Below the pieces are notes generated by a model that was not told where the DNA came from, did no database searches, and saw only the letters and a program-made list of their open reading frames with translations. A program made the translations under genes and the position numbers. 64,000 nt of DNA, taken from positions 187,266 through 251,265 of IMG/VR virus record IMGVR_UViG_3300027963_000035; one strand, given 5' to 3'. Positions 20,794 to 55,314 of this stretch are shown here, piece after piece. How positions within the stretch are numbered: the first letter of the stretch is position 1; every line of letters starts with the position of its first letter.

Positions 20794-21456
20794 ATGAAAT
20801 CAAATCATAATTTATGTCCTTCTTGTGGACGAGCTCTTAAAGGAACAAGAAGAAAGTTTTGCTCTACTGAATGCGTACTAAAATCAAGTAATTCAAAACA
20901 TCAAAATTACAAAAATCAGCACAGACGGGGCGTTTCAAAAAAAATGCAATTAATGAAGATGAAGGGAATGTCGTGTAAGGTATGTGGATACAAAAAGAAC
21001 TATGCAGCCATGGCCTTTCATCACAGAGATCCAAAGAAAAAATCACACGGTCTTGACTCTAGAGCATGTTCAAATATGTCTTGGAAGTCTTTAGTTCTGG
21101 AGGCGGAGAAGTGTGATTTGGTGTGCATGAATTGTCATATGGAAATTCATCATCCACAATTTGAGGCCGAAAATGCAAATAAAATAATGGATGATTTCGT
21201 TCAATTCAATCAAACCGAAGTAAATCAGCACCTTCTTAAACCCATGAATTGCGAGCGATGCGGCGTAGAATATCAACCCGATAAACACAAAAGAAAATTT
21301 TGTTCCGATAAATGTTATCGCTTAAACTCTAGAAGAGTAGAGCGGCCCTCCAAAGAACAACTTGAGAAAGACTTGTCTGAAATGAATTTTGTAAAGGTAG
21401 GCAAAAAATATGGTGTATCAGATAATGCAGTGAGAAAATGGCTTAAGAGCTATTAA
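20794..21456 (+). CDS. Free-standing HNH (His-Cys) endonuclease with zinc-ribbon and HTH tail
   Basis: CKVCGY...FHHRDP...KCDLVCMNCHMEIH; C-terminal VGKKYGVSDNAVRKWLK. Confidence 0.85.
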   Translation: MKSNHNLCPSCGRALKGTRRKFCSTECVLKSSNSKHQNYKNQHRRGVSKKMQLMKMKGMSCKVCGYKKNYAAMAFHHRDPKKKSHGLDSRACSNMSWKSLVLEAEKCDLVCMNCHMEIHHPQFEAENANKIMDDFVQFNQTEVNQHLLKPMNCERCGVEYQPDKHKRKFCSDKCYRLNSRRVERPSKEQLEKDLSEMNFVKVGKKYGVSDNAVRKWLKSY

Positions 21457-21460
21457 AAGA

Positions 21461-21497
21461 CACGAGGCTGCTTGATATTGTCAAGCAGCCTCGTGTT
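21461..21497. terminator. Bidirectional terminator between the HNH gene and the tRNA
   Basis: ACACGAGGCTGCTTGA...TCAAGCAGCCTCGTGT. Confidence 0.75.
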
Positions 21498-21500
21498 ACG

Positions 21501-21764
21501 TCCGAAGGGTGGGATTCGAACCCACAGTCTACAAATTCAAGTTTGTGTGATTTTCACCACTCCTTGGACTTTGTCTTCACCATATCTTACGATTTAGGTG
21601 GTCGCCGTTAAGTCTCTACACGTTCCCTTACGGGCTTCGCTCGGCATTGCCATATGCTCACGCATTTAGGTTTCACCGAATTTGACGACATCCCATACGA
21701 AGTTTCCAATCGTATGGCACGAAAATTCATGAGTTTGTTGCATTAACCGTTTTGCTACCTTCGG
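21501..21764 (-). tRNA. tRNA-CAT (probably Ile2) interrupted by a group I intron
   Basis: Spliced cloverleaf: acceptor CCGAAGG/CCTTCGG plus A, anticodon arm ACAAA-CTCAT^AA-TTTGT, T-arm GTGGG-TTCGAAT-CCCAC. Adjacent to tilS. Confidence 0.85.
21538..21728 (-). ncRNA. Group I intron (IC3, Azoarcus-like), 191 nt
   Basis: U before the 5' splice site; terminal G; IGS GTG; core AAATTCGGTGAAA, AATGCCGAGC, GTAGAGACT, AAGACAAAGTCC; CCTAA/TATGG tetraloop-receptor sequences. Confidence 0.9.
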
Positions 21765-21780
21765 AAATTAACCAACTGTG

Positions 21781-22434
21781 CTAGTCTAGAATTACCGTCT
21801 TATTCTTCAAGTTTTTTTCAATTCTCCTTGAACAATATTTTTCTAGACTTAACTTTTGTTTTTTCATTTCTGGAATGATTGTTTGACGAATCCAATTTCT
21901 TCTGCTTCCTTTGACAACCTTATTGGTTTCGTCCTCCACAGTATAGCAATTCCATTTATTCCTGTCAACGTACTCTTGAAAATCTTTTTTCTTACTTAAT
22001 AGAAAAGGATGGATGATCTTGAATCCATCGAACTCGCTAATTAATTCAAAAGGATTGTGATTGGGTTGTCCACGAAAACAATTAATTAAATAGCTTTCCA
22101 CATAATCATTGAGATGATGAGCAGTGATTACATAACCTTCGTAATCCACAACCTCTTTATAAAAATTTAAGCGGGCCTCCCTGCAATCTTTTTCTGTTTT
22201 TAAATTTTGGCCCTTACCCACAATGCCCTTTAATCCTAATTTACCACAAAGTTCATGGAACTTATTTTCCATGGCATGGTTCTGTTCTCTTAGATTATGA
22301 TTAAAGTGCAATGGAGTAATGTTGTATCCCTTGCTTCTCAACCAAAATAAAGAAGATACGCTATCGACACCCATGCTTACGGCAACATAGCAATGAGTTT
22401 CTTTTGAAACAATTTCTTTAATGATCTTGATCAA
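21781..22434 (-). CDS. tilS: tRNA(Ile)-lysidine synthetase, minimal PP-loop form
   Basis: VAVSMGVDS, HFNHNLR, TAHHLNDYVES, HPFL, EDETN, RNWIR. Confidence 0.85.
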   Translation of the reverse strand: MIKIIKEIVSKETHCYVAVSMGVDSVSSLFWLRSKGYNITPLHFNHNLREQNHAMENKFHELCGKLGLKGIVGKGQNLKTEKDCREARLNFYKEVVDYEGYVITAHHLNDYVESYLINCFRGQPNHNPFELISEFDGFKIIHPFLLSKKKDFQEYVDRNKWNCYTVEDETNKVVKGSRRNWIRQTIIPEMKKQKLSLEKYCSRRIEKNLKNKTVILD

Positions 22435-24019
22435 GACTGAACCTTTTTAAATTTTGGTAACTATTAATTCGCTGCCTACTCTCTTTAATGTCCTGTTCCA
22501 CTTGCTTCCAGAATTCTTCATCAATGCACTTGGTCATAGTTCCCCAAGACACAACCTTATAAATTGTGTTCTTGGTTTCGAATATATTTTTATCTTTATC
22601 GAAACCGATTGGGCGACTAGGCATCAATTCCGTTCCATCCACAACGCCATGAATACGCCAAGTGTCTCCATCTGACCTCATTTGATTGAAATAGCAAGCC
22701 TTTTCAATCATCCTGACTGGCTTTTCACTTATCTTTTCTGTTAGTATATCGTTCATATTCAGGGATGTCTCCATTCTCCTTGATTTTTAGATCTTCATAA
22801 TCTTCGGCTACTCGTCTATAAAACTCTTGCTTTATATTGTCTAATACACCGGTGATCATGGCGACTTTAGTATAAGAGACATCTCCCATCACATTAGAAA
22901 CTACTCTAGAGAAACAATAGTTTATATTTCCAAGAAGTTTTAATACTTCTTCATTAGTTAATGGTTCTTTACTAAATATATTACCATCATCTACGGTTCT
23001 TTTCAAGGCCATAACCATAGTGCTGATTGAATTGTCTAATAGCTTTCTATTTTCTTCTGATATGTAAGGCATCTTTTCCTCAAATTAAAGGTTGGTTCAA
23101 TTATGCAAAAATAGATGGAGATGTCTTGCTTTTCAAGAACTCTATTATTTCATCAAAACATTTTTCGCATAGATCAATGTCATATCTGGTTCCATCTTTA
23201 CCACTAGAATATCCCCAATCTGCACTTAGGGATGCACTTTCATAGTTACCCAATTTATCTTTGCATGAGTTCCCACAGATATCGCAAAATGTATCTTCGT
23301 GAACTTCAATACTTTTATATTTTTTCATATTCCTACCTTTAACTTTATATTAAAAACGTCCCCATTATCTGACGTTGAAACCCTAAATACGGGAAACAGA
23401 GGTCAAGGACGTTACCCTTGGCGATCAACTCAAAGGTGAGTGTTAATTCACTTCTTCCCCAGTATTATAGTCAATAACTGACTTTTTACAAGCCTCTAGC
23501 ATTTTCTTCAAGTTGTGCTTTAATCCTTCGACATTATCTGACACGGGAAGTGATATTTTACCAATGTTTACAATGTCTAGATTTTCATCATGATATACAT
23601 CATGCACAGTATAAGTAATATCAATTCCTCCCCCAGGAATCTTGGTTGCTTTTTTAATGACACGGTAATTCCACGACATTATTGTATTCCTTTAAAGTTT
23701 GTTTTTTCAATAATGAATACGCAAGAAACTTCATATTCTTTTTTGAAATAAGTATTCTTTATCGTGCTCAAGTTTTTGAAACTCTCCCAAGAAAACAATA
23801 TAGCATAATGGCCAAGGCAAAATATCTTTAACCATTTTATAATGATAAAGACAGTCTTTGGTAATTACCATAAAGTGCGGGATTCTGGTCTCTGGTCTGC
23901 ATCTAACTATAAATCTTGGATTGTTTTTTCTTTCAGTCCACAATAAAACAAATGCACCAAAAAGACAGTTTCCGTACTTCATATTACTATCTCCATCTTC
24001 CTTGATGGATTATACTACA

Positions 24020-26164: not shown

Positions 26165-26451
26165 TGCCAAAGGCGGGGGTCGAACCCGCACAGGATGTTA
26201 TCCCGAGGGATTTTCTTACCACTATAGTTTTCACTACCCTTGCGGTTTGTAGTCTGGACTTTACCTTCACCATAACTTCTCAGTTTTAGGTGCTGCCCGT
26301 CAAGTCTCTACACCTTCCTGATTTCTCAGGCTTGGCTCGGTATTAGCAGTTAAGCCTTCACCGAATTTGAGCAGTTCTGCTCTAAAAGTTTCCTTTTAGG
26401 CACTCAATTTAATATCAAGTCCCTTGCGTCTGCCTATTTCGCCACTTTGGC
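26165..26451 (-). tRNA. tRNA-Leu(TAA) interrupted by a group I intron after U34
   Basis: Acceptor GCCAAAG/CTTTGGC plus A; AGGGA-CTT^AAAA-TCCCT; long variable arm. Confidence 0.9.
26215..26416 (-). ncRNA. Group I intron, 202 nt
   Basis: IGS TT-GAG; core AAATTCGGTGAA, AATACCGAGC, GTAGAGACT, AAGGTAAAGTCC; terminal G. Confidence 0.9.
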
Positions 26452-30566: not shown

Positions 30567-31490
30567 CTACTTCTTCAAATACTCATCAATATCCAAAAGA
30601 TTTGGCTGAATGATATGATGGGTGTGTCCCAAATGAGCCATGACATAAGGCTTGGGGCAATCAATTCCTTCAACCTTGCACCAAAGTTCATGGACATTAC
30701 TCAGGAACAACTTAACCACCCAACGCCTTGCCATAGCATCCACATGACCATCTGGCAGAATTCCACTCTTATACTTAGCGATAACTTCCTTGTTCTTGAA
30801 GTTCTTTGAATTCAAGACAGAATCAGCAAGTTCCTTGAATCCGCCTTCAAGGTTCTTTTTTACAAGAAACTCCTTCTGGGTCTTGTAAAGCTTACCATAG
30901 AAGCACTCCTCCTTACCAGAGAACTTCATGAAACTCTGCCCGACCTTCCAGCACAGGGTTTTAAGGCTGGCGTTCCAGGGACGCTTTTGACCCTTTTCCC
31001 ACTTACTTGTGGGATCGAGACCAGCATAACGCCAAATAGCACCAGCGGTCTTTGCCTTATTGATGTCAATATGAGCAACAAGACCAGCAGTAATCACAGG
31101 ACCGATTCCGTAAACCTTATCCTTCAAAATCTTTGCAATCAAAAAACTATCAGTCCAGTGATCCATAGCCCGTTTGATTTGAGTTTCAAGAACTTCTGTT
31201 TGATCGTTCAAGAAACTAAAGAGTTCATGAGGCTCTTTATCCTTGCCAAAAGCGGTGATCTGATTGGTGCTTCGCTTACGATTCTCTTGAATCATATAAT
31301 AGTAATCAACAATATACCTCACTTCATCCTTGGTGAGGGTCTTAATCTTATTAGTGAGATCTTTATTGAGCCTAGCAACAGTCCCAAGACTTGTCAGGCT
31401 ATCTGGCATTAGGCTATCTGCAATCTTCTTGCTTGAAATGCCCTTGCCGCAAGTGGGACACTTCTTCTTTGTTACACTTTCCTTTGACAT
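30567..31490 (-). CDS. IS110/Nop-domain RNA-binding protein lacking RuvC/HNH (TasA-like)
   Basis: A coiled-coil segment, then VYGIGPVITAGLVAHID...AGAIWRYAGLDP...WNASLKTLCW...FYGKLY...HVDAMARRWVVKLFL (IS110 Transposase_20/Nop-like). No N-terminal DEDD domain. About 2 kb from the 36-nt array. Confidence 0.85.
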   Translation of the reverse strand: MSKESVTKKKCPTCGKGISSKKIADSLMPDSLTSLGTVARLNKDLTNKIKTLTKDEVRYIVDYYYMIQENRKRSTNQITAFGKDKEPHELFSFLNDQTEVLETQIKRAMDHWTDSFLIAKILKDKVYGIGPVITAGLVAHIDINKAKTAGAIWRYAGLDPTSKWEKGQKRPWNASLKTLCWKVGQSFMKFSGKEECFYGKLYKTQKEFLVKKNLEGGFKELADSVLNSKNFKNKEVIAKYKSGILPDGHVDAMARRWVVKLFLSNVHELWCKVEGIDCPKPYVMAHLGHTHHIIQPNLLDIDEYLKK

Positions 31491-33399: not shown

Positions 33400-33499
33400 G
33401 GCGAATGGGTGGAATCGAACCACCACAAGGGCATTTGTTTGCCTACTCTGCTGTCGCAGTTCGGAACTTCCCTCACGCTACCACTACGCTACATTCACC
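33400..33499 (-). tRNA. tRNA-His-like RNA or pseudogene with aberrant, expanded anticodon arm
   Basis: G-1:C73 plus GTGAATG/CATTCGC; D-arm GCGT-AGTGGTA-GCGT; T-arm GGTGG-TTCGATT-CCACC. The anticodon loop is replaced by ~38 nt with no GTG. Confidence 0.6.
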
Positions 33500-40297: not shown

Positions 40298-40438
40298 CTC
40301 CGTGACTTGGATTTGAACCAAGAACCATTCGATTAATCCACTGTTTGGGCATTGAACCCAACATAAATTGCCAGCTTTTTTGAGCTTCAATTCAGTGGCT
40401 TTTTACAGTCGAACACTCTACCGTTGAGTTATCACGGA
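40298..40438 (-). tRNA. tRNA-Asn(GTT) with a 69-nt structured insertion in the anticodon
   Basis: Acceptor TCCGTGA/TCACGGA plus G73; TTCGA-CTGT[insert 40336-40404]TAA-TCGAA; T-arm CTTGG-TTCAAAT-CCAAG. Confidence 0.75.
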
Positions 40439-40503
40439 ATAATTAGCACAAAATATTAATAGTAAATACTTTGCACTTTTCTAAACAAAACAAAAAAACA
40501 AAA

Positions 40504-40780
40504 TGACCCAGCCAAGGATCGAACTTGGAACCTACAGCTTAGCGGTACCACTATAGTTTTCACTACCATTACTGTTTGTGGTCTGGACTTTATCTTCACC
40601 ATTGTCTTTCAACTTTAGGTGTCGCCTGTTAAGTCTCTACACCTTCCTAATTGCTTAGGCTTGGCTCGGTATTAGCAGTTAAGCCTTCACCGAATTTAAG
40701 CGATTCTACATTAAAGATTTCTCTCTAAGCACTCCTATTTCACGAAGGCTGTTGCTCTTATCCAATTGAGCTACTGGGCC
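40504..40780 (-). tRNA. tRNA-Arg(TCT) interrupted by a group I intron after U34
   Basis: Acceptor GGCCCAG/CTGGGTC plus A; ACAGC-CTT^CTAA-GCTGT; A20-type D-loop. Confidence 0.85.
40543..40744 (-). ncRNA. Group I intron, 202 nt, close relative of the tRNA-Leu intron
   Basis: IGS TAG-GAG; terminal G; shares long identical blocks with 26215-26416, e.g. AAATTCGGTGAAGGCTTAACTGCTAATACCGAGCCAAGCCT and GGTAGTGAAAACTATAGTGGTA. Confidence 0.9.
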
Positions 40781-51464: not shown

Positions 51465-52790
51465 TCACTCTTTGAAAAGCAGACCACGATCCGCTAACAG
51501 GCTGCAAATCTTTTTCATATCTGCTTTTTTGGGCTCATTATTTCCACGAGCCTTGAACTGAACAATGTTCTTTCTTGCAACTTCAACATTATAAATCATT
51601 TCATTGGTATTCTTGTCCATGACTGCAAATACAACTGTCTTGGCCTTCAAAACATTGTCAGCATAACCGTGGATGCAGTTCTGCATAATATTAGTCCACT
51701 CTTTGAGATCGTAATTTGTATTGGGCATCAACAATCTCATATCGTCAACTTCATGTTCATTGAGACTCCAAAAGTCAGGGAAATTTTCCTTGATTTTAAG
51801 ATCGAATTCGGGATCCTGCAACTTGGCAGTTTCCTTGTTAAGATAGTTAAGGATTTCATCTGCGTTGTTTACAAGACCAACCTGTTGAACGTCCAGGTTA
51901 ATGGTTTCCTTCAACCTTGGGTATTGATCCCCGATTTCAATGAATGCGGCCTGACGAGTTGAACTCTTGAGAAAATTAAGGATTTTCTTTTGGTTGTAAG
52001 ATCCGTCTTTTTCTCTTGTGTAATCTTTAATAAAACTATTCAAACCGCTATAGCCGGCAATATCTCCGAAGTCAACGTTAAAGATATTCTTTTCAATAAC
52101 TTCATAAAGATTGTCTGCATGAAGAGCATCCTTGAAGGCTTCTCCAAAAAAGAAAAACCTATAGTCCAAGAAATTATTATCAGGCTTGAAAATATTCTGC
52201 AGTGCAAGTTTCTTGAGTTTCTTAGCACTAAATCCGAAAACACTTTCAAGAACCTCATCAAGATTTTTACGATTGCTAAATGCTGTGAAATATTTCTCGG
52301 GACAATTAGCAATATTATAAAAATGAATATGAGAATCAGATTGATTCTTTTTATTCAAAACACTATTTGTCTGATCTGAATTGTTGTTTGAATAAATCAG
52401 ATAGAACCCATCCTCGGTAACAGGATAGGCACTGTTCTCAATAAGAGCCTGAATCATTTCAGAGGCAGCATGATCATCGACCCTATTCTTTAGATTATAC
52501 CAGAAGTTGAAAAGACTTTTGAATACCCAACTTGTTTCTTTGAAAAGAAGAAACTGATTGCCCAATATGCTCGGGATAGGATCCTTGCCATAATGGACAA
52601 GTCCATCAATAACCGTGAAACCATCTTTATTGAGATTCTTGGTAGGATTAATAGCATCCGCAACCAATTCAAACTTACCTTCATTCAGGTATGTCTTAAT
52701 CTTATCATACCTATAGTCATTATTGCTAATGGTATAAGTTTGACCCGAAGTATTTATAACAATTGAATTGGAAAGAAGATAGTATTTCAT
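51465..52790 (-). CDS. rIIB-like N-terminus fused to a C-terminal PcfJ domain
   Basis: N-terminal ...SLFNFWYNL...YPVTEDG (rIIB-like); C-terminal DLKEWTNIMQNCIHGY...IVQFKARGNNEP. Downstream of rIIA. Confidence 0.6.
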   Translation of the reverse strand: MKYYLLSNSIVINTSGQTYTISNNDYRYDKIKTYLNEGKFELVADAINPTKNLNKDGFTVIDGLVHYGKDPIPSILGNQFLLFKETSWVFKSLFNFWYNLKNRVDDHAASEMIQALIENSAYPVTEDGFYLIYSNNNSDQTNSVLNKKNQSDSHIHFYNIANCPEKYFTAFSNRKNLDEVLESVFGFSAKKLKKLALQNIFKPDNNFLDYRFFFFGEAFKDALHADNLYEVIEKNIFNVDFGDIAGYSGLNSFIKDYTREKDGSYNQKKILNFLKSSTRQAAFIEIGDQYPRLKETINLDVQQVGLVNNADEILNYLNKETAKLQDPEFDLKIKENFPDFWSLNEHEVDDMRLLMPNTNYDLKEWTNIMQNCIHGYADNVLKAKTVVFAVMDKNTNEMIYNVEVARKNIVQFKARGNNEPKKADMKKICSLLADRGLLFKE

Positions 52791-53139: not shown

Positions 53140-55314
53140 TTAGTTCACCTTGGACTTATTATTGATATAGAATACAAGATCATTCATTTCCCTATTCTTA
53201 CGACCAGCCTCATCACGATCATGACCGTGACCATAATATCCATAACCATAATTCATGCCGGTCGAGATACACCTCAGAAGCGGATACTTTGAGTTGATTT
53301 CGTTCTCCAATTTATTCATCTTATCAAGATTGCCATTAATTGTGGCATACTGTGGGTAGAGGCTGATGATACGGTCGGGGATATCCGCACGAGCAGCAGG
53401 CCTACCCGTTTCCTTGATTCCACCCTTGATTTCAAAGTATTCCCTGAGTTTGGGACATTCGACTCTATCAATGAACTTCCTCATAAAATCAAGAGTGTTG
53501 CTTGCTTGACGATAAACAAAGTTCTCAATAACCTTATCATCCACTTCGATATAATCAGGAAAACTCTCAATTACATCTTCGTAAGTATGAACATTGTCCG
53601 CAGAACCAACGATCAAGGCATAATCCTTCTTAGAACACTTGATCACGGTATATTTGCCGTGATTGATGATAAACTTGACATTATCTTCAAAAGTTTCATC
53701 GTGATACATTTCATCGCCCGAGAAAGGAACGACAACGAATTCACTAGATGAACTTTCGATTTCATCGAGAGTAACATCCTTCTTAGTACCAGAAGCCAAT
53801 TTCTTGCTGCTGTAGGCACTACTAAGCATAATCTCCCGATAACTAATCTTGCCAGCCTCTCTCTTTTGCTTGTAACTCACCCTGTTGTGGGGAAGATCAA
53901 GCATATATTTAGCACCAAGATGTTCCGTAAAACGCTTTTGCTGATCGGTGTTATAACCTTCGATGCAATATACCGCAGTAACGCTCTGGTTGTCCGCAAA
54001 ATACTTCTTGATCTTTTCTTTGATAGTATATCTTGGGTTTCGACCATCATCAAGAATAAAACAAGACTTCAAGGCTTGATCAATCTCAATAGGATGGTTT
54101 TCCTCAATCTTCAATACGCTTCGAGTCTTCTGTTGCTTGAGGTGATACTTATTGATACGGCAACCATCAAAACTCGTAGAAACAAGACGACCGCTATTAT
54201 ACTTATAATCAAAACCATCCTTCTTGAAGGCAAACTCAATCTTTGTTGGAAGTGATGCAAAGTTAAAGATACACTTCACACTAAAGTAGAACTTGATATA
54301 TTCTTCAATAGTGGCAAAATCCTTGCCAAGTTCATCATCAACACAAGATACAAGACTCTTGATGGCCTCACCGCAAATATCATTTACCTTCTTCTTGCTA
54401 TCATCCTTGTCGCTAACACTTTCACGAGTAGCACTGATTTCAAGAATTCCGTTATCAACTTCAACAAAACTCATATGAGTTGCATATGAAGAATTCCTGA
54501 GAGCATTTACATTGGCAGAAAGTTCATGAGATGCAAATTTATTGATGCTATATGGGATCTTATCAATAAGGACAAAGATGTCAGCGTGATAAGAATCAAA
54601 AAGACGCTTGATGAAATCATCCTTATGAAGTATAAACCAATTGCCGTTCTTGAATGAAATATTCTTACTAGAATCTAGCCAAGAAGCAGGAATCTCCAGT
54701 TTGGTGATTCCCTTCAATTCCGGCTTTACATCCCAAAAGAAAGTGCAGCGATAAACAGCATAGACAAACTGTTCAATATCGGACTCACGAATTGGAATCT
54801 GGACTTCGACACCATTGGGTTCATTGGTGTCATCCTCACTAATGAGTTCAAGAGTACCATTGCTATTCTTGCCGGTATGGGCAATATATGAACGAAGCTT
54901 ACCATTGTAGTAACTAAGAATGGTAAAACTATCGGTGTATGCCCATGCACTTTTGGCTCCGATGCCGAAACCACCAGTCTGGACATTATCGGCACGTTTT
55001 GTGCTGCTTCCATAATTGACGAAAACATCCTTGACACGTTCCGGACTAAGACCAGTACCATAATCCCTGATCTTAAGAACGCTATCCAACTTGGTGGGAA
55101 GCGTAACAGAAACCGGAGTATCACTATTGCCTGAATCACGGTGGCTATCCCGTGCATTGCAAAGATATTCCTGAGTCAGAGTCCGAATAGGATTTGCATA
55201 AAGCCTATTTCGGAGGATATCAATGATAGTGCTAACATCGCCAATTCCAAATTCAATGGATTCGGCATTAAAGTTGTTAGTCTTGAGATTGGAACCGTTC
55301 GTATTGATCTTCAT
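53140..55314 (-). CDS. rIIA: rIIA-like protein with GHKL (Hsp90-like) ATPase domain
   Basis: LYANPIRTLTQEYLCNARDSH, IRDYGTGLS, STK, GGFGIGAKS, NGVEVQIP. Confidence 0.85.
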   Translation of the reverse strand: MKINTNGSNLKTNNFNAESIEFGIGDVSTIIDILRNRLYANPIRTLTQEYLCNARDSHRDSGNSDTPVSVTLPTKLDSVLKIRDYGTGLSPERVKDVFVNYGSSTKRADNVQTGGFGIGAKSAWAYTDSFTILSYYNGKLRSYIAHTGKNSNGTLELISEDDTNEPNGVEVQIPIRESDIEQFVYAVYRCTFFWDVKPELKGITKLEIPASWLDSSKNISFKNGNWFILHKDDFIKRLFDSYHADIFVLIDKIPYSINKFASHELSANVNALRNSSYATHMSFVEVDNGILEISATRESVSDKDDSKKKVNDICGEAIKSLVSCVDDELGKDFATIEEYIKFYFSVKCIFNFASLPTKIEFAFKKDGFDYKYNSGRLVSTSFDGCRINKYHLKQQKTRSVLKIEENHPIEIDQALKSCFILDDGRNPRYTIKEKIKKYFADNQSVTAVYCIEGYNTDQQKRFTEHLGAKYMLDLPHNRVSYKQKREAGKISYREIMLSSAYSSKKLASGTKKDVTLDEIESSSSEFVVVPFSGDEMYHDETFEDNVKFIINHGKYTVIKCSKKDYALIVGSADNVHTYEDVIESFPDYIEVDDKVIENFVYRQASNTLDFMRKFIDRVECPKLREYFEIKGGIKETGRPAARADIPDRIISLYPQYATINGNLDKMNKLENEINSKYPLLRCISTGMNYGYGYYGHGHDRDEAGRKNREMNDLVFYINNKSKVN

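What the first reader, a model, noticed from the sequence alone, without database searches (positions are those of the whole stretch)
21538..21728. 191-nt Azoarcus-like group I ribozyme in a phage tRNA-CAT
Seen: insertion after CAU, IGS GUG, and element order closely following the Azoarcus pre-tRNA-Ile intron (about 205 nt, one of the smallest characterised self-splicing group I introns). This copy is shorter and AT-richer, so it is a candidate natural minimal ribozyme.
Basis: partly seen in the sequence, partly recalled or inferred. Interest (0 to 1): 0.6.

Follow-up and report, generated by a model that had tools for sequence, protein, structure and literature searches.

The report
Self-splicing intron in phage tRNA-Ile2 gene
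A large freshwater phage carries a 191-base Azoarcus-type group I self-splicing intron in the anticodon loop of its own tRNA(CAU) gene; the intron looks functional, but it is one of a large family and is not a uniquely minimal ribozyme.

Summary
On the minus strand, window 21538-21728 is a 191-nt group I intron (Rfam RF00028, 59.2 bits against a cut-off of 50). It sits between nucleotides 36 and 37 of a tRNA(CAU) gene (21501-21764).

- **Splice sites:** U-1 pairs with the G of the guide sequence GUG, and the intron ends in G.
- **Structure:** all 59 pairs of a P1-P9 model are canonical here. Across 87 relatives, 93% of cells pair, against 28-39% in slid controls, and 30 pairs show compensatory changes.
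- **Boundaries:** a related phage contig has the same tRNA without the intron, joined exactly at CAT|AA.
- **tRNA identity:** the gene just upstream is a TilS N-domain (lysidine synthase), and AUA is the phage's commonest Ile codon. The tRNA is therefore most likely tRNA-Ile2, as in Azoarcus.
- **"Minimal" claim is weak:** the 14 nt missing relative to Azoarcus come only from the P5 and P6a hairpin tips. Relatives of 188, 189 and 190 nt exist.
- **Context:** the family is common in freshwater Betaproteobacteria and in viral contigs. This genome has four intron-bearing tRNA genes, which contradicts a 2014 review statement that phage introns lie only in protein genes.
- **Gap:** no RNA data exist, so splicing is inferred.

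The parts
21729..21764 (-). tRNA(CAU) 5' exon, nt 1-36: acceptor CCGAAGG, D arm, anticodon stem ACAAA, loop C-U-C-A-U
   Evidence: ARAGORN -i; sequence. Identical 36/36 in the intron-less orthologue L268.
21538..21728 (-). 191-nt group I intron, IC3 Azoarcus type, with no ORF. Helix coordinates: P1 loop 21721-21728; guide GUG 21718-21720; P2 21693-21717 (L2 GAAA 21703-21706); P3 21684-21689 with 21601-21606; P4 21674-21679 with 21641-21646; P5 21650-21670 (receptor CCUAAA..UAUGG); P6 21620-21640; P7 21610-21616 with 21566-21571; P8 21578-21600 (receptor); P9.0 21563-21564 with 21540-21541; P9 21545-21562 (L9 GAAA 21552-21555); terminal G 21538.
   Evidence: Rfam RF00028 59.2 bits. All 59 modelled pairs are canonical. 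Covariation on 87 sequences. Motif coordinates checked.
21501..21537 (-). tRNA(CAU) 3' exon, nt 37-73: A37 A38, anticodon stem UUUGU, variable loop, T arm, acceptor CCUUCGG, discriminator A. CCA is not encoded.
   Evidence: L268 differs at 2 variable-loop positions only.
21460..21496 (-). Intrinsic-terminator-like hairpin (16 pairs, 9 G-C) followed by CUUUU, directly after the tRNA
   Evidence: consensus scan only.
21781..22434 (-). 217-aa ORF on the same strand, ending 17 nt upstream of the tRNA: a TilS N-terminal (PP-loop) catalytic domain, i.e. tRNA(Ile)-lysidine synthase without the C-terminal domains
   Evidence: TIGR02432 lysidine_TilS_N 99.6 bits (cut-off 93.6) and PF01171 E 7e-26. All PDB matches are TilS: 1wy5 E 9e-15, 1ni5, 3a2k. 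Syntenic in L268 at 55-64% aa identity.
20794..21456 (+). Free-standing HNH endonuclease gene, convergent with the tRNA; present in this phage and absent from close relatives
   Evidence: phrog_2255 E 3e-19. DNA contigs of runs X5 and X6 skip 20819-21441. The 323-kb relative L115 (96-98% identical) lacks 20822-21441 but has an identical tRNA and intron.

Best explanation
This is a functional, ORF-less, self-splicing group I intron of the IC3/Azoarcus type. It interrupts the anticodon loop, between nt 36 and 37, of a phage-encoded tRNA(CAU) that is most likely tRNA-Ile2.

Inferred pathway:
1. The tilS-like gene and the tRNA are transcribed on the minus strand and end at the hairpin terminator.
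2. The intron folds: P1 with a U.G wobble, P3-P8 core with the P3/P7 pseudoknot, L2 docking into the P8 receptor and L9 into the P5 receptor.
3. An external guanosine attacks after U36.
4. The freed 3'-OH of U36 attacks after the terminal G (21538). This ligates the exons to give the loop C-U-C-A-U-A-A.
5. The ends are processed and CCA is added by host enzymes.
6. The phage TilS domain converts C34 to lysidine, so the tRNA is charged with Ile and reads AUA, the phage's commonest Ile codon.

Shown here: the intron's boundaries, its fold by covariation, its family, the intron-less allele, the TilS domain and the codon usage. Inferred: catalysis itself, the order of the steps, and Ile2 identity. 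The intron is an ordinary-sized member of a large family shared by freshwater Betaproteobacteria and phages, not a specially reduced ribozyme.
For: - Rfam hit above the curated cut-off.
- ARAGORN intron at 36/37 in a good cloverleaf.
- U-1.G and terminal G present; all 59 pairs canonical.
- On 87 unique relatives, 93.4% of cells pair against 28-39% when partners are slid. 30 pairs have changes on both sides, and 0/500 shuffles reach the observed values.
- Window-specific compensations: P6 G91-C107, P7 U119-A158, P9.0 A165-U189.
- Within the phage clade, the L109 copy is also 191 nt. It differs at 25 intron positions: 5 pairs are changed on both sides and stay paired, 2 are changed on one side and stay paired, and most of the remaining changes lie in unpaired positions. 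The anticodon-stem pair 30:40 is also compensated.
- The only unpaired core positions that depart from columns at least 90% conserved (A120, A155) carry the same base in other IC3 introns of this genome.
- An intron-less orthologue has the junction exactly at CAT|AA, in a syntenic locus.
- A TilS N-domain gene lies 17 nt upstream.
- ATA makes up 1597 of 3158 Ile codons in long ORFs.
- The tRNA is not an initiator: 1:72 is paired and the anticodon stem is A/U-rich.
Against: - There is no RNA evidence at all: no RNA run holds the locus.
- P10 pairing between the 3' exon and the guide region is weak or absent by inspection. In tRNA introns the anticodon stem is known to hold the exons instead (Zaug et al. 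1993, listed in the references of PMC3984707).
- The single-sequence MFE is not significantly lower than shuffles (z -1.44). That method cannot see the pseudoknot.
- One receptor position (64:75) is A-U here and A.C in L109/L269, rather than the canonical G.U.
- Ile2 versus elongator Met identity rests on the neighbouring gene and codon usage, not on identity elements.
- The TilS-like protein lacks the C-terminal tRNA-binding domains of bacterial TilS.
Confidence: 0.8

Rival explanations
1. The intron is a decayed relic that no longer splices, and the tRNA gene is a pseudogene.
For: There are no RNA data. P10 is weak. Two bases, A120 and A155, differ from columns at least 90% conserved.
Against: Every helix is intact, and the changes that are specific to this lineage are compensated. 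The same 191-nt intron and tRNA are kept in at least four phage or metagenome contigs, with substitutions mostly in unpaired positions. It is the only tRNA(CAU) found in the 251 kb of the genome held, and half of all Ile codons are ATA. A dedicated tilS-like gene sits beside it.
Confidence: 0.05
2. The intron splices, but the tRNA is an elongator tRNA-Met rather than tRNA-Ile2. The PP-loop neighbour would then modify something else.
For: The anticodon CAU is shared by both tRNAs. ARAGORN labels it Met. The acceptor stem (C1-G72, A-U at 4:69 and 5:68) does not resemble what I recall of E. coli tRNA-Ile2. The TilS-like protein has only the N-domain.
Against: The protein passes the curated TilS N-domain equivalog cut-off, and only TilS structures match it. 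The gene pair is syntenic in related phages. ATA usage is very high while no tRNA-Ile(UAU) was found. The bacterial homologues of this intron sit in tRNA(CAU) genes, as does the founding Azoarcus tRNA-Ile case.
Confidence: 0.15
3. The intron and the adjacent free-standing HNH gene form an active homing unit. The nuclease would cut intron-less tRNA(CAU) alleles of co-infecting phages, and repair would copy in the intron, with or without the HNH gene. This does not exclude the main explanation.
For: The HNH gene abuts the tRNA and is present or absent among strains 96-98% identical. The intron is present or absent among related phages. In L036 the tRNA-plus-intron module sits in unrelated flanks. 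From my own knowledge there are precedents for free-standing nucleases acting at tRNA clusters or intron insertion sites: T4 SegB and cyanophage F-CphI.
Against: The target of the HNH protein is unknown. L115 keeps the intron without the HNH gene. There is no Pfam or PDB match to guide a prediction. Alternatively, the intron-less state of L268 could be ancestral, with a single old gain of the intron.
Confidence: 0.25

Closest known systems
[quoted passage not shown]
   Same: It has the same host gene type and insertion site (after CAU, 36/37) and the same guide sequence GUG after an 8-nt P1 loop. It is colinear from P2 to P9, with both GAAA tetraloops (L2, L9), both CCUAA./UAUGG receptors (P5, P8), P9.0 and a terminal G. 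It shares the signature motif with more than 120 bacterial contigs, mostly Betaproteobacteria and including Rhodocyclaceae and Zoogloeaceae.
   Different: It is 14 nt shorter (P5 tip -4, P6a -10). GC is 45.5%; Azoarcus is about 70% from my memory, which I did not compute. It sits in a phage genome and in a divergent tRNA body (C1-G72, A/U-rich anticodon stem). P10 is weak. It lies on a long branch in the family tree with other viral copies.
[quoted passage not shown]
   Same: It is also an IC3 core inside a tRNA anticodon loop. The other introns of this genome (Leu-UAA, Arg-UCU, probable Gln-UUG) are inserted between nt 34 and 35, as that intron is.
   Different: The CAU intron sits at 36/37 and has the Azoarcus-type P9, not the extended 3' region of the 202-nt introns.
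Group I introns of phage protein-coding genes (T4 td/nrdB, Twort, Bastillevirinae; about 206-nt introns of gut 'Jug' phages, PMC12363816)
   Same: These are also small self-splicing introns in phage genomes, often accompanied by HNH or other homing endonucleases.
   Different: Those interrupt protein genes. A 2014 review states that all phage introns known then were in protein-coding genes despite the many phage tRNA genes (PMC3984707). BLAST of this intron against 50,697 GenBank phage records gave only weak core matches. The annotated ones I checked lie in polymerase or reductase genes. One unannotated 735-kb metagenomic phage has an intron in tRNA-Leu(UAA).

Membership tests
Group I intron (Rfam RF00028) | Covariance-model score above the curated gathering threshold | tested here: met
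   59.2 bits against 50; E 1.8e-12, E 1.7e-15.
Group I intron | U at the end of the 5' exon, paired as U.G with the internal guide sequence in P1; G as the last intron nucleotide | tested here: met
   U36 pairs with G9 of GUG. C-A-U/G-U-G is invariant in 87/87 relatives, and the terminal G is invariant.
Group I intron | Conserved core P3-P8, with the P3/P7 pseudoknot and a P7 carrying the bulged nucleotide of the G-binding site | tested here: met
   P3, P4, P6, P7 and P8 are all canonical here. On the family alignment these helices pair in 94-100% of cells, with compensatory changes in each. A114 is bulged in P7.
Group I intron | Self-splicing with guanosine and Mg2+ | not testable with these tools
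   No RNA run holds the locus; a bench assay is needed.
IC3, Azoarcus-type tRNA intron | No P5abc extension; L2 GAAA with a P8 receptor and L9 GAAA with a P5 receptor; P9.0; length about 200 nt | tested here: met
   Motifs found at the expected places. The P9.0 pair covaries: A-U here, G-C elsewhere. Colinear with the Azoarcus sequence in PMC8890501. The tertiary docking itself is inferred.
IC3, Azoarcus-type tRNA intron | Insertion between nt 36 and 37 of a tRNA(CAU) gene | tested here: met
   ARAGORN 36/37. The intron-less orthologue L268 is joined at CAT|AA. 91 intron-bearing tRNA(CAU) genes in the loci fetched (87 unique sequences) have the intron at the same site.
tRNA-Ile2 (lysidine tRNA) | CAU anticodon, not an initiator, substrate of TilS, charged by IleRS | tested here: inconclusive
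   CAU is present and initiator features are absent. A TilS N-domain gene is adjacent and syntenic. ATA is the top Ile codon. Identity elements, modification and charging were not testable.
Mobile group I intron with homing endonuclease | Endonuclease ORF inside the intron | tested here: not met
   191 nt leaves no room for an ORF. An HNH gene is adjacent and free-standing, and varies between strains.

The most novel reading that the evidence does not exclude
Self-splicing group I introns may be a common but so far undescribed feature of tRNA genes in large environmental phages. This genome has four, in the tRNAs that read its four favourite A-ending codons. Such introns would be exchanged with the tRNA-Ile2 genes of freshwater Betaproteobacteria. 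Phage tRNA inventories would then be systematically under-counted, and the rule that phage introns live in protein genes would be wrong. The introns might also gate tRNA maturation, or make the phage tRNA genes immune to nucleases that target the anticodon region.
Probability: 0.4. Interest if true: 0.6.

Novelty: new member of a known kind. Interest (0 to 1): 0.45.

Why it matters
- **As a ribozyme:** it offers a natural, lower-GC and slightly trimmed Azoarcus-type sequence, with natural variants of 188-222 nt, for folding and engineering studies. It is not a new minimal form.
- **For phage biology:** a 2014 review stated that phage group I introns occur only in protein genes. Here one phage has four tRNA genes split by such introns, and more than 100 IMG/VR contigs show the same. 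Default tRNA finders miss or mislabel these genes, so phage translation repertoires are under-estimated.
- **As a test system:** the tilS plus tRNA-Ile2 cassette, the strain-variable HNH gene and a natural intron-less allele together allow direct tests of intron mobility and of how a phage secures AUA decoding.

Tried and rejected
- **Close relatives in GenBank phages:** megablast of 21000-24000 against GenBank phages gave no match.
- **Technical failure:** the first IMG/VR scan returned no answer and was repeated.
- **MFE folding:** single-sequence folding gave z -1.44, which is uninformative for a pseudoknotted ribozyme.
- **My own boundary finder:** a regex-based boundary search picked wrong 5' sites. 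I discarded it in favour of ARAGORN-based boundaries.
- **Very short introns:** ARAGORN 'introns' of 173-188 nt in other tRNAs are boundary misplacements. The 189-nt one (L061) is a real CAU intron with shifted boundaries.
- **Suppressor tRNA / TGA recoding:** rejected. Reading TGA through merges only 4 ORF pairs, against 13 for TAA, and 58 of 201 long ORFs end in TGA. ARAGORN's 'tRNA-SeC(tca)' is better read as tRNA-Gln(UUG) with an intron at 34/35, given the U-1/terminal-G rule, a 3' end homologous to the Leu intron, and CAA being the top Gln codon.
- **RNA evidence:** no RNA run holds the locus.
- **Intron-less DNA alleles:** DNA contigs from four runs showed none. The 3' exon pattern in IMG/VR found only intron-bearing copies.
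- **HNH protein:** no Pfam or PDB match.
- **Literature:** searches found no report of group I introns in phage tRNA genes. The huge-phage paper PMC7162821 never mentions introns.
- I did not search or fold a joined (spliced) exon sequence. The exons were searched separately as short patterns, and the natural intron-less locus L268 served as the reference for the mature tRNA. I did not type the Azoarcus sequence into a script, so no computed identity to it is given.

Full report
**What is there**

The feature is on the minus strand. Rfam's group I model (RF00028) matches 21545-21738(-) at 59.2 bits, above the gathering score of 50 (E 1.8e-12).

Default ARAGORN sees only a broken 'tRNA-???' at 21500-21567. 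With introns allowed it finds a clean 74-nt tRNA(cat) at window 21500-21764, with a 191-nt intron between nt 36 and 37.

Read directly:
- The 5' exon is 21729-21764 and ends CUCAU.
- The intron is 21538-21728. It begins with an 8-nt P1 loop followed by GUG-CC, and ends in G.
- The 3' exon is 21501-21537 and begins AAUUUGU. The ligated anticodon loop would therefore be C-U-C-A-U-A-A.

**Structure**

I wrote a P1-P9 model by analogy with IC3 introns. It includes the P3/P7 pseudoknot and the 2-bp P9.0. All 59 pairs are canonical in this copy.

The tertiary-contact motifs are in place:
- L2 and L9 are GAAA tetraloops.
- P5 and P8 each carry a CCUAAA..UAUGG receptor.

To test the model I collected relatives using a P9 signature pattern:
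- 37 IMG/VR contigs matched.
- More than 120 bacterial contigs matched, mostly freshwater Betaproteobacteria such as Polynucleobacter, Limnohabitans, Methylophilaceae and Rhodocyclaceae.
- ARAGORN places 91 of these introns in tRNA(CAU) at the same site, of which 87 are unique.

On the alignment of these 87 (A1), the results were as follows:

| Measure | Result |
|---|---|
| Cells forming a pair | 93.4% |
| Cells pairing when 3' partners are slid | 28-39% |
| Pairs with changes on both sides | 30 |
| Shuffles reaching the observed values | 0 of 500 |

Several changes peculiar to this phage lineage are compensated: P6 G91-C107, P7 U119-A158 and P9.0 A165-U189.

A second phage copy, L109, is also 191 nt and differs at 25 intron positions:
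- 5 pairs are changed on both sides and stay paired.
- 2 pairs are changed on one side and stay paired.
- 1 change alters the receptor wobble position.
- Most of the remaining changes lie in unpaired positions.

The only unpaired core bases that depart from columns at least 90% conserved are A120 and A155. The same bases occur in the other IC3 introns of this genome.

**Comparison with Azoarcus**

The Azoarcus ribozyme sequence is printed in PMC8890501, which states that it lacks the first eight natural nucleotides. That gives 197 + 8 = 205 nt.

Set beside the window's intron, the two are colinear without indels except in two places:

| Element | Window | Azoarcus |
|---|---|---|
| P5 tip | 21 nt | 25 nt |
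| P6/P6a | 21 nt | 31 nt |

That accounts for the whole 14-nt difference. I made this comparison by eye and did not type the Azoarcus sequence into a script. The shortening is therefore peripheral, and nothing of the core or the tertiary contacts is missing.

In the 87-member sample the lengths run from 188 to 255 nt with a median of 206. Introns of 188 nt (L139) and 190 nt (L143) are shorter, and a 189-nt relative (L061) lies outside the set. GC is 45.5%, the 9th lowest of 87. The 'minimal, AT-rich' reading is therefore only mildly true.

**Boundaries confirmed by a natural intron-less allele**

I searched the exons separately.

- The 3' exon pattern in IMG/VR found only three intron-bearing contigs.
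- The 5' exon pattern in metagenome contigs found six loci.

One of these, L268 (a 36-kb contig), has the identical 36-nt 5' exon followed directly by the 3' exon, with 2 differences in the variable loop. Its upstream ORF is the orthologue of the window's, at 55-64% amino-acid identity. The intron is thus an insertion polymorphism among related phages, and the junction is exactly CAT|AA.

L036, a 188-kb contig, has the same intron with 31 extra nt forming a hairpin in the P1 loop, giving 222 nt. Its acceptor pair 1:72 is U-A instead of C-G.

**Which tRNA it is**

The ORF ending 17 nt upstream on the same strand (21781-22434) is a TilS N-terminal domain:
- TIGR02432 scores 99.6 bits against a cut-off of 93.6, and PF01171 gives E 7e-26.
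- All PDB matches are TilS.

In long ORFs, ATA is the commonest Ile codon (1597 of 3158). ARAGORN found no other tRNA(CAU) and no tRNA-Ile(UAU). The tRNA also lacks initiator features.

I therefore read it as tRNA-Ile2, the same isoacceptor as in Azoarcus. The gene pair looks like a cassette that secures AUA decoding. This identity is inferred, not shown.

**Surroundings**

- **Terminator:** a strong terminator-like hairpin follows the tRNA.
- **HNH gene:** beyond the terminator, on the other strand, is a free-standing HNH endonuclease gene at 20794-21456.
- **HNH polymorphism:** DNA contigs of two freshwater runs skip 20819-21441. The 323-kb relative L115, 96-98% identical, lacks the same stretch yet has an identical tRNA and intron. 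The HNH gene is thus a separate, strain-variable mobile element. Whether it drives intron homing is open.
- **Phage identity:** the record is a 251-kb IMG/VR phage contig with GC 35.7%. It carries rIIA/rIIB and a DNA ligase and uses the standard code. All 24 runs listed for the locus, four of them holding at least half of its sampled words, are water metagenomes, mostly freshwater or lake.

**Wider picture**

The genome has four RF00028 hits, all in tRNA genes: CAU; Leu(UAA); Arg(UCU); and one that ARAGORN calls SeC(UCA) but which is better read as Gln(UUG). These decode ATA, TTA, AGA and CAA, each the most used codon for its amino acid.

A general IC3 core pattern hits more than 118 IMG/VR contigs. 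107 of the 118 hits lie inside intron-bearing tRNA genes.

A 2014 review says all phage introns known then were in protein genes (PMC3984707). My searches found no later report of tRNA introns in phages.

In GenBank phages, the weak matches that I checked in annotated records lie in polymerase or reductase genes. One unannotated 735-kb metagenomic phage has an intron in tRNA-Leu(UAA).

**Limits**

No RNA data exist for this locus, so splicing is inferred from conservation. P10 is weak by inspection. IMG/VR 'viral' labels were taken as given for the other contigs.

Noticed in passing
window 26165-26451(-), intron 26215-26416; window 40503-40780(-), intron 40543-40744; G000:C1:144281-144554(-), outside the window: There are three more group I introns, 202 nt each and closely related to one another. 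They sit in tRNA-Leu(UAA), tRNA-Arg(UCU) and a tRNA that ARAGORN calls SeC(UCA) but that is better read as Gln(UUG). All are inserted between nt 34 and 35, as in cyanobacterial tRNA-Leu. With the CAU tRNA, they decode the phage's most used codons: TTA, AGA, CAA and ATA.
   Followed up: partly
window 40298-40438(-): tRNA-Asn(GUU) carries a 69-70-nt structured insertion in the anticodon loop. The insert folds as a three-way junction with a T-arm-like hairpin. It is not a group I intron and has no Rfam match. In the syntenic locus of the 323-kb relative (L104), the insert is nearly identical while the tRNA acceptor and T stems are largely replaced. The mechanism of removal, if any, is unknown.
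   Followed up: partly
window 33400-33498(-): A tRNA-Gly-like gene (Rfam tRNA, 38 bits) has about 38 nt where the 7-nt anticodon loop should be. ARAGORN reads this as a 27-nt 'intron'. It is unexplained.
   Followed up: no
window 21781-22434(-): The phage encodes a 217-aa TilS made of the catalytic N-domain only, directly upstream of the tRNA(CAU). Phage TilS has been reported before in a Pseudomonas jumbo phage (PMC6892783).
   Followed up: partly
window 20794-21456(+): A free-standing HNH endonuclease gene is present here and precisely absent (20819-21441) in close relatives. It has no Pfam or PDB match.
   Followed up: partly
L036:5640-5861 (IMGVR_UViG_3300027741_000022): This contig holds the same intron with a 31-nt hairpin inserted in the P1 loop (222 nt), in a different phage background whose flanks are unrelated to the window.
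   Followed up: partly
alignment A1, tree: The window's intron groups with other viral copies. With weak support it falls near introns of freshwater Methylophilaceae (Ca. Methylopumilus). I recall these as low-GC genomes, but did not check. This is a possible host clue only.
   Followed up: no
L277 (GenBank LR756501.1, 190 kb region): A published 735-kb uncultured phage genome, which has no annotation, carries a tRNA-Leu(UAA) gene with a 205-nt group I intron.
   Followed up: partly
window 30567-31490(-); 53140-55314(-) and 51465-52790(-): One ORF is transposase-like (phrog_4285, E 2.5e-36). Two others are rIIA and rIIB-like genes.
   Followed up: no
window 21500-21567: Default ARAGORN labels the 3' part of the split gene 'tRNA-??? 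(tg)'. Standard tRNA annotation would miss or mislabel at least 4 of about 10 tRNA genes in this genome.
   Followed up: yes
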